This document shows positions 50,359 to 63,488 of a DNA stretch of 64,000 bases, piece by piece. The notes below the pieces were generated by a model. It saw nothing but the letters and a program-made list of their open reading frames with translations, had not been told where the DNA came from and did not search any database. The translations under genes were made by a program, and so were the position numbers. Every line of letters begins with the position of its first letter. Position 1 is the stretch's first letter. Location: positions 188,877 through 252,876 of the IMG/VR virus record IMGVR_UViG_3300033143_006101; one strand, written 5' to 3'.

Positions 50359-50775
50359 ATGTCGTATAAAAATAAGCAAAGGCAATTAGAATACCAACGA
50401 AACTGGATGAGGAAAAGAAGAAATATGTTTTTTTCAGGTAAAGTTTGTGCGAAATGTGGGTCTTCAAAAAAATTGGTATTACATCATATAAATCCAGAAG
50501 AAAAAGAAAGTCATTATGTTTGGTCGTGGTCAGAAAAACGAAGAGAAGCAGAGCTTAAAAAATGTGTTGTTTGGTGCGAAAAGTGTCATATTGAATATCA
50601 TACAAATAAACGGAGATTAAAAAATATACATGGTACACGTACTGGATATAATAAGTATAAATGTCGTTGCGATGCTTGTATACAAGCTAATAGCCTATAT
50701 CAAAAACAATGGCGTAATCAAAAACAATTAGCTGGCGTTGTGTCCGAACTGGTTAGGTCATCGATTGCAACTTGA
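50359..50775 (+). CDS. HNH endonuclease (paralogue of 52502-52885); stop lies inside tRNA-Cys
   Basis: CAKCGS..LVLHHINP..K...ELKKCVVWCEKCH; HGTRTGY..CRC..C. Confidence 0.8.
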   Translation: MSYKNKQRQLEYQRNWMRKRRNMFFSGKVCAKCGSSKKLVLHHINPEEKESHYVWSWSEKRREAELKKCVVWCEKCHIEYHTNKRRLKNIHGTRTGYNKYKCRCDACIQANSLYQKQWRNQKQLAGVVSELVRSSIAT

Positions 50776-51840: not shown

Positions 51841-51979
51841 GGGGGAGTGCAGGCCAATGGTTGGCCATCTGATTTTGGGTCAGACAAAGCACTGCATTAA
51901 AGCTGTATCAACTTGAACCTTTTAGGTTCCATAAGAAACCAGCGTACAAGCATATCGGTTCGATTCCGACTCTCCCCCA
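51841..51979 (+). tRNA. tRNA-like gene 1 (TTG anticodon) with ~70-nt variable-loop module
   Basis: GGGGGAG/CTCCCCC, ggcc/ggcc D stem, tctga-ttTTGgg-tcaga, GGTTCGATTCC; insert 51885-51954. Confidence 0.8.
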
Positions 51980-51981
51980 CA

Positions 51982-52194
51982 TGGCTCAACTGGTATAGCC
52001 AATCAGTTAAACGCAGAGATAACAGGCTCCTTTGAAAAAAACATGAGAGTCTCTGACAAAGGAAAGTTGATCACTAAACCTTGATACAAATCGCATGCGT
52101 GTATCTGCCTTCCAGGAAAGACTGGTTTACCCTATGCTTTCATCGGCATCGCCTTCATCGGCGTGATAGGGGTTGACAGCTCGGAAAGACGGGC
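51982..52194 (+). ncRNA. ~210-nt multi-pseudoknot structured RNA candidate
   Basis: Two H-type pseudoknots, twin TTCATC-loop hairpins, two GGAAAGAC hairpins, no ORF of 60 aa or more. Confidence 0.65.
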
Positions 52195-52199
52195 AACAC

Positions 52200-52342
52200 G
52201 GCGAAGTAGCCAAGTTGGGTAAAGGCACTAGAATTGAAATCTAGCTAACAGCAGACTAACTAAATTAACTTGAACTCAGAAGAGTTCCCCATAACTTAGT
52301 TTACAAGCAAAATTATCGATGGTTCGAGTCCATCCTTCGCCA
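52200..52342 (+). tRNA. tRNA-like gene 2 (TGA anticodon) with 73-nt variable-loop module
   Basis: GGCGAAG/CTTCGCC, ctaga-atTGAaa-tctag, gatgg-TTCGAGT-ccatc; insert 52245-52317. Confidence 0.8.
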
Positions 52343-52344
52343 AT

Positions 52345-52481
52345 GCCCGAGAAGCTCATGGAGAGCACTTTTTCTACTAAAAAAGAGGTAACAATTCTTT
52401 TGGGTTATTTCAACTTGAACTCTTTAGAGTTCCATCGGAACTAACTTACAAGCATTTGCCGTTCGATTCGGCACTCGGGCT
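52345..52481 (+). tRNA. tRNA-like gene 3 (ambiguous ACT / 8-nt loop) with 71-nt variable-loop module
   Basis: GCCCGAG/CTCGGGC, 5-nt D-loop, ctttt-tctactaa-aaaag, tgccg-TTCGATT-cggca; insert 52386-52456. Confidence 0.75.
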
Positions 52482-52501: not shown

Positions 52502-52885
52502 ATGCCATACAAGGATAAGGAGAAGCAATCAGAGTATCAGTTGCAATGGATGAAAGCTAGAAGAAATGCTTTCTTTAATGGCAAGTGTTGTAAAAAATGT
52601 GGGTCTATGTTTAACTTAGTCTTACACCATAAAAACCCAGCCGAGAAAGAAGATCATAGGATATGGTCGTGGTCGGAAGAAAGAAGAAATGCAGAACTTA
52701 AAAAATGTGTTGTTTGGTGTTTATCATGTCACATAGAACATCATGCTGATAGACTGAGATTAAAAGAAATACACGGCACAAGAACTGGTTATAAGAATTA
52801 TGGGTGTCGATGTAAAAAATGCACACAAGCAAATACGGTTTACATAAGAAATTGGAATAGAAGAAAAAAAGGGGTATTCGTCTAG
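52502..52885 (+). CDS. HNH endonuclease; stop lies inside tRNA-Glu
   Basis: CKKCGS..LVLHHKNP...ELKKCVVWCLSCH. Confidence 0.8.
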   Translation: MPYKDKEKQSEYQLQWMKARRNAFFNGKCCKKCGSMFNLVLHHKNPAEKEDHRIWSWSEERRNAELKKCVVWCLSCHIEHHADRLRLKEIHGTRTGYKNYGCRCKKCTQANTVYIRNWNRRKKGVFV

Positions 52886-53613: not shown

Positions 53614-54055
53614 TTTAATCAAGTTAGCATTGGAAGGGCACTTCGATGTTATTATTCATGGATGTAATTGTTATCGTACCATGGGTAAAGGTATTGCAAG
53701 TACTATTAAACGAGTTTTTCCTGAAGCATACACAGCCGATAGAGAAACACGTGCCGGAGCCAGCAAGCTTGGTACTTTTTCTCATGCTACAGTCGTAAGA
53801 CCAAAGGGAAGAATAACTATTGTAAATGCATACACACAAGACAGATTTAATCCTAAATACAGTAAAGGAAAAAGCATGGCTGATTACCGGGCAATAACTG
53901 ATGTAATGAAAAGCATCAAAGTGGCATTTCACGGATTTAGAATTGGTTATCCTAAAATAGGAGCAGGGCTTGCTCGTGGTGATTGGAATAAAATATCTGA
54001 AATTATTGATAGAGAGTTGGAAGGAGAAGATCACACGTTGGTAGTATTACCATAA
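53594..54055 (+). CDS. Macrodomain (ADP-ribose/Appr-1''-p processing) protein, apparent ACG start
   Basis: KTIKGDLI...IIHGCNC..TMGKGIA, VNAYTQ, YPKIGAGLARGDW. Confidence 0.85.
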   Translation, partial: TKTIKGDLIKLALEGHFDVIIHGCNCYRTMGKGIASTIKRVFPEAYTADRETRAGASKLGTFSHATVVRPKGRITIVNAYTQDRFNPKYSKGKSMADYRAITDVMKSIKVAFHGFRIGYPKIGAGLARGDWNKISEIIDRELEGEDHTLVVLP

Positions 54056-54754: not shown

Positions 54755-55864
54755 ATGAAAGCACCACCAAAGAAAAAAACAACAGGTAAAGGTAAAACAG
54801 CAAGTAAAAATGCCCCTAAGAGAAAACCAGTAGAAAGAGAAGAAATTTCAAAGGTTGAAGAGATATTCTCAGAGGACAATGCTCGTATAAGATTCGGGGT
54901 AGAATGTGTACCAGCGATTAAGGTACGAATGCAATCAGATCCAAATTCTTTTGCCCATTTGTTTCATAGTTATATATTAGAGCAAGGGCAGATAGGATGC
55001 CATAACTTACACCCACCAAGAAAAATTCTTTACCTGGAAGATAAACAAGAAGGTCCTGAGAGTTTAGGTACTCGAGTAGATATTAGTAATAAAACTTCAA
55101 GGGTTTTTCCCAGTGAATATGTTATAGCCATAACTGTGGATATACCCCTATCAGAAATAGCGATTCGTACCAAGATAGACATACTCCATAAAGAGCTTGT
55201 TGATACAGCTTCTTCAAAATTAAACAGGAATATAGCTACGAATTGGCTCAAGCTTCTTTATGCCTCTGCACTGGTTAATAAAAATATTAAAACTCTAAGA
55301 AGCTTCTGGAGGAACATCCCAGTTATTCGTTGGAAAGTTCTTTTTAGTTTAATCACTAAAGCGAGAAGTAAAATTCATCAAAGGGGGTACCAGACATTGG
55401 TATTTTTAGTTCACCCGGCAACACTTGCGGAATTGGAACTATTTCTTGGAGGCCATCTAAGAGTAACTTCAACCAGTTTTCCATATGTTAAACAATCAAT
55501 ATATGTTCCGGAAGGGTTTGTGCTTATATTTCCCAATGATAGGACTATGGCTGCAAAGAATATACGAATAGATTTGACTGCGTTTGGGGCTAATAAGTTT
55601 GTTATGGGATCAGCTACCTTTGGGTTTATGTTTGTACAGTCTGAGTCCTCTGTTATTCTTGATCCCGAATCCGTAGTTTGTATTAGAATGAGTAATTTTA
55701 AAATTCCTGGTTATCTAAAAGAAATTAAGTCTTATCTGATGCCTACGGTTTTTTCTAAGCTAAAAGAGAAAAGCATAAAGCTGTGGGGAAAAGTTAAGAA
55801 GTTAAAGAATAAGATAATGAATAGGATAAAGAAGTTTAGGAAGAAAAATGCTGGAATCGCATAG
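54755..55864 (+). CDS. Divergent full-length paralogue of the major capsid protein with Lys-rich termini
   Basis: RIRFGVECVP/QGQI/RVFPSEY/SEIAIR/VPEG/IRIDLT..ANKF..FGFMFV..DPESV align in order with MCP RLRFGAEMIP/QGQI/RIFPPEF/SEIATR/VPEG/IRVDLT..ADQF..YGWLFV..NPRSV. Confidence 0.85.
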   Translation: MKAPPKKKTTGKGKTASKNAPKRKPVEREEISKVEEIFSEDNARIRFGVECVPAIKVRMQSDPNSFAHLFHSYILEQGQIGCHNLHPPRKILYLEDKQEGPESLGTRVDISNKTSRVFPSEYVIAITVDIPLSEIAIRTKIDILHKELVDTASSKLNRNIATNWLKLLYASALVNKNIKTLRSFWRNIPVIRWKVLFSLITKARSKIHQRGYQTLVFLVHPATLAELELFLGGHLRVTSTSFPYVKQSIYVPEGFVLIFPNDRTMAAKNIRIDLTAFGANKFVMGSATFGFMFVQSESSVILDPESVVCIRMSNFKIPGYLKEIKSYLMPTVFSKLKEKSIKLWGKVKKLKNKIMNRIKKFRKKNAGIA

Positions 55865-55933
55865 AGGTCGAGTGCACCTGCCTTGTAAGCAGGAGGGTAA
55901 ACCCCCGCGTCAGTTCAAATCTGACTTCCAGCT
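55850..55933 (+). tRNA. tRNA-Thr(TGT) with long variable arm
   Basis: GCTGGAA/TTCCAGC, cctgc-ctTGTaa-gcagg, 15-nt variable region with a GGG-taaa-CCC stem. Confidence 0.9.
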
Positions 55934-55939
55934 CATAAA

Positions 55940-63416: not shown

Positions 63417-63488
63417 ACGGTTGTAGCTCAACGATAGAGTACTTGTTTTACCAAGCAGGAGACGGGCGTTCAATTCGCCCCAACCGCT
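63417..63488 (+). tRNA. Gly-type tRNA with 8-nt anticodon loop (ACC/UACC) and A1:C72 mismatch
   Basis: ACGGTTG/CAACCGC-T; cttgt-tttaccaa-gcagg; gggcg-TTCAATT-cgccc. Confidence 0.75.

What the first reader, a model, noticed from the sequence alone, without database searches (positions are those of the whole stretch)
51841..52481. Three tRNA-like genes carry the same ~70-nt pseudoknotted module in the variable loop
Seen: three different tRNA bodies (51841-51979, 52200-52342, 52345-52481) have intact acceptor, D, anticodon and T arms but variable regions of 70, 73 and 71 nt. All share the order [stem P1]-AACTTGAAC-hairpin-GTTCC-(n)AT-[P1']-TACAAGCA-T arm. AACTTGAAC is at 51910, 52267 and 52412; TACAAGCA is at 51945, 52302 and 52447. 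P1 differs in sequence but keeps pairing (GCTG/CAGC; AACTAA/TTAGTT; GGTTA/TAACT). The hairpin covaries (GAACCT/AGGTTC, GAACTC/GAGTTC, GAACTCT/AGAGTTC). The invariant CTTG can pair with the invariant CAAG outside P1, forming a pseudoknot. Ordinary Gln(TTG) and Ser(TGA) tRNAs exist elsewhere in the window, so copies 1 and 2 are redundant for decoding. Established: bacterial tRNA introns are group I/II and much larger, and normal variable arms are about 24 nt or less. The P1-P2-P3-P1'-P2' topology recalls HDV-like/theta ribozymes, but their conserved L3/P1.1 nucleotides are not evident. Inference: a new class of tRNA-aptamer chimeras (nuclease decoys/traps, ribosome or EF-Tu modulators) or a novel small excisable or self-cleaving intron.
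Basis: partly seen in the sequence, partly recalled or inferred. Interest (0 to 1): 0.92.

Follow-up and report, generated by a model that had tools for sequence, protein, structure and literature searches.

The report
Y-RNA modules grafted onto phage tRNAs
Three tRNA-shaped genes of a 253-kb phage carry, where a short variable loop should be, a ~50-nt rod that looks like the stem by which Y RNAs hold the ring-shaped Ro60 protein, which this phage also encodes; Y RNAs that mimic tRNA are known, but whole tRNAs carrying such a stem appear not to have been described.

Summary
Three tRNA-like bodies (51841-51979, 52200-52342, 52345-52481) have 70-, 73- and 72-nt variable regions that share ACTT-hairpin-C-N13-15-TACAAGCA. 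Chance expects no such match.

The module is not a ribozyme or a pseudoknot. It is a rod of fixed size: helix P1, an internal loop, helix P3. I curated 26 copies from six phage contigs and saw seven more in two further contigs. Both helices covary. The proposed CTTG:CAAG pairing does not.

The same rod also occurs circularly permuted, as the closing stem of small RNAs, which is the Y RNA architecture. These permuted copies lie beside a 550-aa gene whose predicted fold matches Ro60/TROVE proteins over its full length. In the window's own phage that gene lies about 72 kb away and has five more module copies around it.

In related phages the rod is grafted into the variable, anticodon or D loop of a tRNA, or replaces the acceptor stem.

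Best reading: these are tRNA-Y RNA chimeras that bind a divergent phage Ro60. They do not pass as Rfam YrlA and lack the known Ro motifs, so I rate them a new variant of a known kind. Ro60 binding, whether the RNA stays intact, and the downstream function are all inferred.

The parts
51841..51979 (+). Copy 1: tRNA-like body, anticodon loop TTTTGGG (TTG, Gln-like), with Sec-like long acceptor and D stems and a 70-nt variable region
   Evidence: Rfam tRNA-Sec 35.6 bits, below the cut-off. ARAGORN calls Gln(ttg) after in-silico shortening. Fold z-score -2.9.
51902..51952 (+). Copy 1 module: P1a 51902-05, ACTT 51911-14, P3 hairpin 51915-29, unpaired C 51930, P1b 51940-43, TACAAGCA 51945-52
52200..52342 (+). 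Copy 2: tRNA body with a class-II-like D arm, anticodon loop ATTGAAA (TGA), discriminator A, and a 73-nt variable region
   Evidence: Rfam tRNA 53.1 bits with the insert in the variable region. ARAGORN calls Ser(tga) after shortening.
52258..52309 (+). Copy 2 module: P1a 52258-63, ACTT 52268-71, P3 hairpin 52272-87, P1b 52296-52301, TACAAGCA 52302-09
52345..52481 (+). Copy 3: tRNA-like body that starts 2 nt after copy 2, with an odd anticodon loop (CTACTAA or 8 nt), A at position 8, and a 72-nt variable region
   Evidence: Not found by Infernal. ARAGORN calls Ser(act) after shortening. Fold z-score -4.9.
52403..52454 (+). Copy 3 module: P1a 52403-07, ACTT 52413-16, P3 hairpin 52417-32, P1b 52442-46, TACAAGCA 52447-54

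Best explanation
The three genes encode chimeras of a tRNA body and a Y RNA stem.

Shown:
- The roughly 50-nt rod that projects from the variable-arm position has a fixed layout: helix P1, an internal loop with ACUU on one strand and C-A-N-N on the other, then helix P3. An invariant UACAAGC(A) sits at the inner end of P1.
- The same rod, circularly permuted so that P3 is closed by the RNA's own 5' and 3' ends, forms small Y-RNA-like genes clustered around a Ro60-like gene in this phage and in seven related contigs.

Inferred:
- The rod is the docking site for the phage's own Ro60 homologue, a 550-aa protein encoded about 72 kb away in the same genome.
- The chimeras stay intact.
- The tRNA part gives the RNA tRNA-type end processing and stability, and serves as the handle that brings Ro60 to a tRNA-recognising partner. 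This is the role proposed for the tRNA-like domain of bacterial YrlA.

By analogy only: the ribonucleoprotein modulates RNA decay or RNA quality control, for example through host PNPase as reported for Thermus phage phiLo Ro60. It could equally act in counter-defence, as reported for the Ro60-like gp130 of phage Bas63.
For: Module occurrence:
- A strict definition finds 23 copies in the window plus the Ro-gene contigs. It finds 1 hit in 30 shuffles of those sequences and 0 in 445 kb of 53 control viral loci.
- I curated 26 copies from six contigs and saw seven more in L067 and L069.
- Eight of 11 distinct contigs that encode the protein have 2 to 6 copies close to the gene, mostly within 2 kb and at most about 7 kb away in L011.

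Helices and geometry:
- P3 base pair 1 is G-C 17, A-T 6, G-T 3; base pair 2 is A-T 13, G-C 11, G-T 2; base pairs 5-8 and all P1 positions show three or four Watson-Crick pair types.
- Cognate strands pair far better than non-cognate strands: P1 6.7 versus 1.9 bp, and P3 beyond bp 4 4.3 versus 0.5 bp.
- The strand lengths are fixed, at 9-10 nt and 13-15 nt, in all 26 copies.

Y RNA architecture:
- Permuted copies have it. L005 2516-2385(-) runs T arm, closed acceptor stem, D arm, anticodon arm, and ends about 30 nt before the protein's start codon.
- That copy is the best Rfam YrlA hit in the data, at 29 bits, E 2e-4.

The protein:
- A profile of 36 homologues hits PDB Ro60 at E 1.6e-6.
- 10 of 36 members hit Pfam vWA_Ro60.
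- The AlphaFold model has pLDDT 86.
- Its top 12 Foldseek hits are all Ro60/TROVE structures, aligned over 511-604 columns. They include 9KOP and 9L5Y (phage phiLo Ro60), 1YVP, 2I91, 9NFA and 2NVO.
- The DxSxS MIDAS motif is invariant.

The tRNA bodies:
- They are redundant for decoding. Normal Gln(ttg), Ser(tga) and Pro(tgg) tRNAs exist in the same genome.

Literature:
- YrlA Y RNAs with tRNA-like domains lie next to Ro60 in bacteria and phages (PMC4201824).
- Phage phiLo Ro60 binds two upstream Y-like RNAs and host PNPase (PMC12135203).
- Bas63 gp130 is Ro60-like, lies upstream of tRNA genes and counters the Ppl defence (PMC11482910).
Against: - There are no binding or expression data.
- The known Ro-binding sequence motifs (GGUCCGA, GNCGAAN0-1G) are absent from all 26 modules.
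- No copy reaches the Rfam YrlA cut-off of 69 bits, and none matches Rfam Y_RNA.
- The three window copies are about 72 kb from the Ro60-like gene.
- Three contigs with more distant homologues of the protein (L013-L015) show no module.
- The copy in an anticodon loop (L005 6725-6590) leaves a perfect 7-nt loop TTTGGAA right after the insert. That would also fit an excisable element.
Confidence: 0.65

Rival explanations
1. The rod is an excisable element, a protein-assisted or otherwise spliced intron. Its removal yields functional tRNAs, and the Ro60-like protein acts as chaperone or plays no part.
For: With its intron option, ARAGORN reads L005 6725-6590(-) as tRNA-Pro(tgg) with a 63-nt intron between positions 31 and 32, leaving an intact 7-nt loop. 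Inserts sit at several tRNA positions: the variable region, the anticodon arm and the D loop. This recalls archaeal introns (own knowledge). Every insert ends with TACAAGC(A) close to tRNA sequence.
Against: - The 12-17 nt between the tRNA and P1a are not conserved, so there is no defined 5' boundary.
- No group I/II or ribozyme family matches.
- About half the copies are permuted and enclose only small hairpins or 20 nt, so there is nothing to splice.
- The tRNAs that would be released are redundant or have odd anticodons such as ACT and ATT.
- No ligase or splicing endonuclease was seen in the ORFs I scanned near the loci.
Confidence: 0.15
2. The rod binds some other factor, either a different phage or host protein or a small ligand. 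On this reading its linkage to the Ro60-like gene reflects only shared placement in tRNA arrays.
For: The known Ro motifs are absent. The window copies are far from the gene. In several contigs the Ro-like gene sits at the edge of a tRNA array.
Against: Permuted copies that hold no tRNA still cluster tightly at the gene, for example L008 2118-2190, which ends about 20 nt before the start codon. The Ro-like gene was the only neighbouring protein seen in all the module-bearing loci; the one neighbour pair I compared directly showed no similarity. The module is absent from 445 kb of control phage DNA.
Confidence: 0.1
3. The module is a small self-cleaving ribozyme (HDV-like, theta, or a new class) that processes the tRNA transcripts. 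The permuted forms would be like hammerhead types I-III.
For: The element order P1-P2-P3-P3'-P1'-P2' is possible on paper. Circular permutations do exist. The conserved single-stranded nucleotides could form a catalytic core.
Against: - No Rfam ribozyme hit at E<=10.
- P2 is not supported. Its G is base pair 1 of P3 and changes to A six times with a compensating change in P3, not in CAAG. ACTC occurs three times without compensation.
- In several copies P1 runs the full 9-10 bp. A 3-nt UAC linker cannot cross a helix of that length (inference from pseudoknot geometry).
Confidence: 0.04
4. The module is an inert, recently spread repeat, a miniature mobile insertion in tRNA genes.
For: The core is 100% identical among the four type-A copies of this phage. 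A transposase-like ORF lies among the Y-like RNAs.
Against: The flanking helices differ completely between copies yet always pair. The core is conserved across phages whose Ro-like proteins are only 41-57% identical to this one by tblastn or BLASTP.
Confidence: 0.02

Closest known systems
YrlA Y RNAs of bacteria and mycobacteriophages (Rfam RF02553; Chen et al. 2014, PMC4201824)
   Same: A non-coding RNA that joins a Ro60-binding stem to a tRNA-like fold with T and D arms and an elbow. It is encoded beside a Ro60 orthologue, often in several copies. One permuted copy here (L005 2516-2385) has the same order of T arm, closed acceptor stem and D arm, and gives the best YrlA score in the data.
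   Different: - In YrlA the acceptor stem is closed, there is no anticodon loop, and the Ro stem takes the place of the anticodon stem.
- The window RNAs are unpermuted tRNAs with open acceptor ends and anticodon arms, and the rod is in the variable arm.
- The YrlA motif GNCGAAN0-1G is absent. The conserved elements here are ACUU, an unpaired C after P3, and UACAAGC(A).
- Scores are 20-29 bits against a cut-off of 69.
Thermus phage phiLo Ro60 with Yrl1 and Yrl2 (PMC12135203; PDB 9KOP, 9L5Y)
   Same: A phage-encoded Ro60 with Y-like RNA genes next to it. Its structure is the top Foldseek match of the protein here.
   Different: Yrl1 and Yrl2 were identified by a CGAA motif and are simple stem-bulge-stem RNAs, not tRNAs. 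The protein here has about 15% identity to it and no Pfam TROVE hit.
Ro60-like gp130 of E. coli phage Bas63 (PhageMaP preprint, PMC11482910)
   Same: A Ro60-like protein encoded at a phage tRNA array. The authors guessed that some annotated tRNA genes there could be Y RNAs.
   Different: That was a suggestion with no RNA motif defined. tblastn of the protein here against 50,697 phage records finds no cultured phage, so gp130 is not a close relative.
Metazoan Y RNAs and D. radiodurans Yrn1
   Same: A terminal helix with an internal loop or bulge that carries the Ro60 site, and a variable effector part beyond it. The strand G-Y-Y-C-C here faintly recalls GGUCCGA (by eye only).
   Different: No match to Rfam Y_RNA at any threshold I tried. 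There is no bulged-C helix of the vertebrate sequence. The effector part here is a tRNA.
Class II tRNAs and tRNA-Sec (long variable arms), and circularly permuted tRNA genes of Cyanidioschyzon (own knowledge)
   Same: An extra helix projects from the variable position. Gene-level circular permutation of a tRNA occurs here too (L005 2516-2385, L009 7584-7720).
   Different: Natural variable arms are 24 nt or less and carry no conserved protein-binding loop. The permuted genes of red algae are re-joined into normal tRNAs, and nothing suggests that here.

Membership tests
Y RNA (Ro60-associated ncRNA, functional class) | Encoded in a genome with a Ro60 orthologue, typically adjacent to it | tested here: met
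   The same contig encodes a Ro60 homologue. Five module copies lie within 5 kb of it. The three window copies are about 72 kb away. The linkage recurs in eight contigs.
Y RNA (Ro60-associated ncRNA, functional class) | A long stem with an internal loop or bulge that holds the Ro60 site | tested here: met
   A P3-internal loop-P1 rod of fixed size, with both helices supported by covariation.
Y RNA (Ro60-associated ncRNA, functional class) | Known Ro-contact sequence (GGUCCGA in vertebrates, GNCGAAN0-1G in bacteria) | tested here: not met
   A regex over all 26 modules finds neither motif. A bare CGAA occurs once.
Y RNA (Ro60-associated ncRNA, functional class) | Physically bound by Ro60 | not testable with these tools
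   Needs EMSA, RIP or a structure.
YrlA (Rfam RF02553) | Reaches the gathering score of 69 bits | tested here: not met
   19.6 bits for window 52291-52395, which spans two adjacent copies. 29.1 bits for L005 2409-2513. 25.8 bits in L067.
YrlA (Rfam RF02553) | tRNA-like domain with a closed acceptor stem, and the Ro stem in the anticodon-stem position | tested here: not met
   The window copies have open acceptor ends, anticodon arms, and the rod in the variable region.
tRNA (Rfam RF00005) | Cloverleaf at or above the 29-bit cut-off | tested here: inconclusive
   Copy 2 scores 53.1 bits. Copy 1 matches only tRNA-Sec, at 35.6 bits against a cut-off of 47. Copy 3 gets no Infernal hit. ARAGORN calls all three only after the insert is shortened.
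tRNA (Rfam RF00005) | Variable region of 4-24 nt | tested here: not met
   70, 73 and 72 nt.
HDV-like / theta ribozymes | Nested double pseudoknot with a covarying P2 and P1.1, and a match to the family models | tested here: not met
   No Rfam hit at E<=10. The proposed P2 is uncompensated in 9 of 26 copies.
Group I / group II tRNA introns | Match to the intron models, and size above 200 nt | tested here: not met
   No hit. The inserts are about 50-65 nt.
Ro60 / TROVE proteins (for the partner protein, L005 701-2353 minus strand) | Helical-repeat ring followed by a vWA domain with a MIDAS motif | tested here: met
   The Foldseek top 12 are all Ro60 structures aligned over their full length. 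The profile hits PDB Ro60 at E 1.6e-6. D357, S359 and S361 are invariant.
Ro60 / TROVE proteins (for the partner protein, L005 701-2353 minus strand) | Pfam TROVE domain (PF05731) recognised by sequence | tested here: not met
   The protein itself has no Pfam hit. Only vWA_Ro60 appears, in 10 of 36 relatives. Distant relatives also show only vWA domains.

The most novel reading that the evidence does not exclude
The rod is a portable Ro60 tag that these phages graft onto otherwise complete, processable and perhaps chargeable tRNAs, at any arm. The tRNA then guides Ro60, and whatever nuclease it recruits, onto tRNA-recognising host proteins such as anticodon nucleases, tRNA repair or modification enzymes, or the translation machinery. 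That would make it a tRNA-guided counter-defence or tRNA-surveillance particle. The series of forms seen here would also be living intermediates showing how YrlA-type Y RNAs arose from tRNAs: insertion in the variable, anticodon or D loop, replacement of the acceptor stem, and circular permutation.
Probability: 0.2. Interest if true: 0.85.

Novelty: new variant of a known kind. Interest (0 to 1): 0.62.

Why it matters
Y RNAs were known to mimic tRNA, but how and why remained open. Here a single Ro60-type docking stem is found attached in many ways: to whole tRNAs at every arm, to permuted tRNAs, and to plain hairpins. All of this occurs in one group of large phages, next to a Ro60 family that sequence models miss.

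This provides:
- a defined RNA motif and a defined protein partner that can be tested directly;
- a natural series linking tRNAs to YrlA-type Y RNAs;
- a concrete lead on what phage Ro60 proteins, recently tied to PNPase control and to counter-defence, use as guides.

There is also a practical consequence for annotation. Standard tRNA finders miss these genes, and Rfam YrlA does not pick them up.

Tried and rejected
- Rfam at gathering and at E<=10 thresholds on the region and on related loci gave only tRNA hits and weak YrlA hits. There were no ribozyme, riboswitch, intron or Y_RNA hits.
- blastn of the region against 50,697 phage records gave only tRNA-Glu and tRNA-Ala similarity.
- The exact motif scanned over IMG/VR returned the window's own contig plus chance hits in coding DNA. 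A degenerate motif scan gave 55 stretches, of which only the contigs already known were real.
- The MAFFT alignment of the type-A modules (A2) is out of register by one base for two rows and misaligns P1. I therefore did not use it for the count of structure pairs or to build a covariance model. Pair counts were made in scripts at fixed geometry instead.
- My first two scanners were too loose, giving 17 hits in 3 shuffles and then about 9 per shuffle. I replaced them with a strict one.
- A Pfam or PHROGs scan of ORFs near both loci found HNH endonucleases, a transposase-like ORF, an HD phosphohydrolase, a radical SAM protein and a weak Macro domain. It found no RNA ligase, PNPase or splicing endonuclease.
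- The ORF downstream of the Ro-like gene is not conserved between two contigs.
- The chimeras' tRNA bodies are not close paralogues of the phage's normal isoacceptors.
- The promoter and terminator scan was uninformative.
- The 220-nt spacer between copies 1 and 2 shows no fold signal.

Full report
**1. The observation**

The pattern AACTTGAAC-N5-25-GTTCC-N5-25-TACAAGCA occurs three times in the window, at 51910, 52267 and 52412, all on the + strand. None of 100 dinucleotide-preserving shuffles gave a match.

ARAGORN ordinary tRNAs in the window but none of the three loci. Infernal gives mixed results:
- 52200-52342 is a tRNA at 53.1 bits, with the whole insert in the variable region.
- 51841-51978 matches only tRNA-Sec, at 35.6 bits, below that family's cut-off.
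- 52345-52481 is missed.

When the variable region is shortened in silico, ARAGORN calls Gln(ttg), Ser(tga) and Ser(act) over hundreds of deletion end points. The variable regions are 70, 73 and 72 nt. The three RNAs fold better than shuffles, with z-scores of -2.9, -3.2 and -4.9. In each fold the insert forms a rod on the cloverleaf. So the description is correct.

**2. More copies, and permuted copies, in the same phage**

The window is the last 64 kb of IMG/VR contig IMGVR_UViG_3300033143_006101, which is 252,876 bp long. Another part of that contig (L005, contig 166-180 kb) holds five more copies on one strand:
- One copy sits in the anticodon loop of a tRNA (6725-6590). It scores 49 bits on Rfam tRNA. 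With its intron option, ARAGORN reads it as Pro(tgg) with a 63-nt insert.
- Four copies are circularly permuted. The 3' half (hairpin 3' strand, C, N, P1b, TACAAGC) comes first, and the 5' half (P1a, ACTT, hairpin 5' strand) follows 20-90 nt later. The two hairpin strands are exactly complementary.

What the permuted rods enclose varies:
- 20 nt;
- an 87-nt hairpin region;
- a whole tRNA with anticodon ATT (6836-6764, 61 bits);
- a permuted tRNA at 2516-2385, which runs T arm, acceptor stem closed by a loop that contains ACCA, D arm and anticodon arm.

That last RNA is the best Rfam YrlA (Y RNA-like) match in the data, at 29 bits and E 2e-4, well under the 69-bit cut-off. It ends about 30 nt before a 550-codon ORF.

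**3. The neighbouring protein is a Ro60 homologue**

Alone, the 550-aa protein has no Pfam, PHROGs or PDB sequence hit. It has many metagenomic relatives. In the library clustered at 50% identity there are 482 representatives at E<=1e-3.

- A profile of 36 relatives hits PDB 9NEN, RNA-binding protein Ro60, at E 1.6e-6.
- 10 of the 36 hit Pfam vWA_Ro60.
- A DxSxS MIDAS motif is invariant.
- The AlphaFold model has mean pLDDT 86.
- Its 12 best Foldseek matches in the PDB are all Ro60/TROVE structures, aligned over 511-604 columns. They are Thermus phage phiLo Ro60, Xenopus and human Ro60, and Deinococcus Rsr. Isolated vWA domains follow only after these.

The protein is therefore a divergent full-length Ro60. 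No cultured phage in 50,697 records has a detectable relative.

**4. The link between module and gene recurs**

I fetched loci around homologues of the protein. Eight of 11 distinct contigs carry 2-6 module copies close to the gene, mostly within 2 kb and at most about 7 kb away in L011.

A strict definition of the module required all of the following:
- ACT[TC] or GCT[TC];
- P3 of at least 6 bp;
- 13-15 nt to TACAAG[CT];
- P1 of at least 4 bp at the fixed register.

It finds 23 copies in these sequences, 1 hit in 30 shuffles of them, and 0 in 445 kb of 53 other viral loci.

Infernal confirms insert-bearing tRNAs in the relatives:
- in the variable region (L008 1572-1705, by inspection; others listed);
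- in the D loop (L010 4346-4484, a 72-nt insert);
- in the anticodon arm (L010 5181-5314, a 73-nt insert);
- as tRNA cores whose acceptor stem is replaced by P1 (L012 4413-4468 and 4852-4918).

**5. Anatomy of the module**

Twenty-six curated copies from six phages were laid out at fixed geometry.

Near-invariant elements:
- ACTT (23 copies; ACTC in 3);
- TACAAGC (25 of 26);
- an unpaired C after P3 (24 of 26).

Covariation:
- P3 base pair 1 is G-C 17, A-T 6, G-T 3.
- Base pair 2 is A-T 13, G-C 11, G-T 2.
- Base pair 4 is C-G 20, T-A 5, T-G 1.
- Base pairs 5-8 use all four Watson-Crick types, and every P1 position uses three or four.
- Cognate strands pair much better than strands taken from different phages: P1 6.7 versus 1.9 consecutive pairs, and P3 beyond bp 4 4.3 versus 0.5.

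Geometry: the strand from the first P1 base to ACTT is always 9-10 nt, and the strand from P3 to TACAAGC is always 13-15 nt. The rod therefore has one size. In several copies P1 runs the full 9-10 bp, leaving a 4-5 by 4-5 nt internal loop (ACUU opposite C-A-N-N).

**6. The pseudoknot is not supported**

- The G of CTTG is base pair 1 of P3. When it changes to A (six copies), the compensating change is in P3 and CAAG stays the same.
- ACTC (three copies) is also uncompensated.
- With a P1 of up to 10 bp, a 3-nt UAC linker could not carry AAG across the helix to CUU. This is an inference from H-type pseudoknot geometry.
- No ribozyme, riboswitch or intron model matches at E<=10.

**7. Comparison with what is known**

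- Chen et al. 2014 (PMC4201824) described YrlA RNAs beside Ro60 in more than 250 bacteria and phages. They have a tRNA-like domain (T arm, closed acceptor-like stem, D arm) and a 5' motif GNCGAAN0-1G that resembles the vertebrate GGUCCGA.
- Thermus phage phiLo Ro60 binds two upstream Y-like RNAs and host PNPase (PMC12135203).
- A few jumbo phages were noted to have ROT/TROVE proteins (PMC7824862).
- Bas63 gp130, which is Ro60-like and sits upstream of tRNA genes, counters the Ppl defence. Its authors guessed that some tRNA genes there might be Y RNAs (PMC11482910).
- Listeria phage CKA15 has an Rsr-like gene near abundant non-coding RNAs (PMC12282133).

The present RNAs share the principle but differ in these respects:
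- They lack both known motifs.
- They fail the YrlA and Y_RNA models.
- They use their own conserved elements.
- The tRNA part is a complete, unpermuted tRNA body with the rod in the variable arm, or in other arms in relatives.

I found no paper describing this in four literature searches.

**8. Mechanism**

- Shown: the rod, its covariation, its permutations, and its genomic linkage to a Ro60 homologue.
- Inferred: the rod docks the phage Ro60; the chimeras stay intact; the tRNA part supplies tRNA-type processing and a handle for a tRNA-recognising partner.
- By analogy only: the particle modulates RNA decay or surveillance, or counters a host defence.

The tRNA bodies are redundant with normal isoacceptors in the same genome and are not close paralogues of them. 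This argues against a decoding role.

The main rival is excision of the rod to release tRNAs. The clean 7-nt loop left in the anticodon-loop copy favours it. The lack of a conserved 5' boundary, the tRNA-free copies, and the absence of ligase or endonuclease genes in the ORFs I scanned argue against it.

**9. Verdict**

The finding is real and non-random. It is best read as a new variant of the Ro60-Y RNA system, with tRNA-Y RNA chimeras and a divergent phage Ro60. It is not a new ribozyme or intron class. Binding and RNA fate need experiments.

Noticed in passing
window 55850-55934: tRNA-Thr(TGT) carries an extra 12-nt hairpin (GGGTAAACCCCC) in its variable region. This is unusual for a class I tRNA. 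It has none of the module's motifs.
   Followed up: no
window 63417-63488: Rfam finds a tRNA here (47 bits) that ARAGORN does not call.
   Followed up: no
window 51980-52199: The 220-nt spacer between copies 1 and 2 begins with a D-arm-like GGCTCAACTGGTATAGCC. It shows no fold signal (z -0.04) and no Rfam hit.
   Followed up: partly
window 50359-50775, 52502-52885, 53630-54055: Small ORFs are scattered through the tRNA array. One has a weak HNH hit. One has a CxxC/HH pattern by eye but no Pfam hit. One has a Macro-domain hit below the cut-off.
   Followed up: partly
window 52342-52345: Copies 2 and 3 are only 2 nt apart. The 3' half of copy 2 plus the 5' half of copy 3 imitates a permuted Y-like RNA, which gives a weak YrlA hit at 52291-52395 (19.6 bits).
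   Followed up: yes
L005 6836-6764 (minus strand; same contig, outside the window): A tRNA with the unusual anticodon ATT (Rfam 61 bits) has acceptor-stem mismatches and is enclosed by the two halves of a module. The conserved TACAAGCA overlaps its first four bases.
   Followed up: partly
L007 3915-4952 and 11876-12373: A transposase-like ORF (phrog_10081, E 1e-23) lies among the Y-like RNAs. An HD phosphohydrolase-like ORF (phrog_990) lies downstream of the Ro60-like gene.
   Followed up: no
L012 2098-2415: A related phage contig encodes a tmRNA (107 bits) inside the tRNA array that leads up to its Ro60-like gene.
   Followed up: no
L067 8250-8930: In this relative the 5' element reads GCTT instead of ACTT, while TACAAGCA is unchanged. 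So the A of ACTT is not strictly invariant.
   Followed up: partly
L013, L014, L015: Three contigs with more distant homologues of the Ro60-like protein (31-50% identity in tblastn) show no recognisable module within 6 kb. Their partner RNAs, if any, must differ or lie elsewhere.
   Followed up: partly
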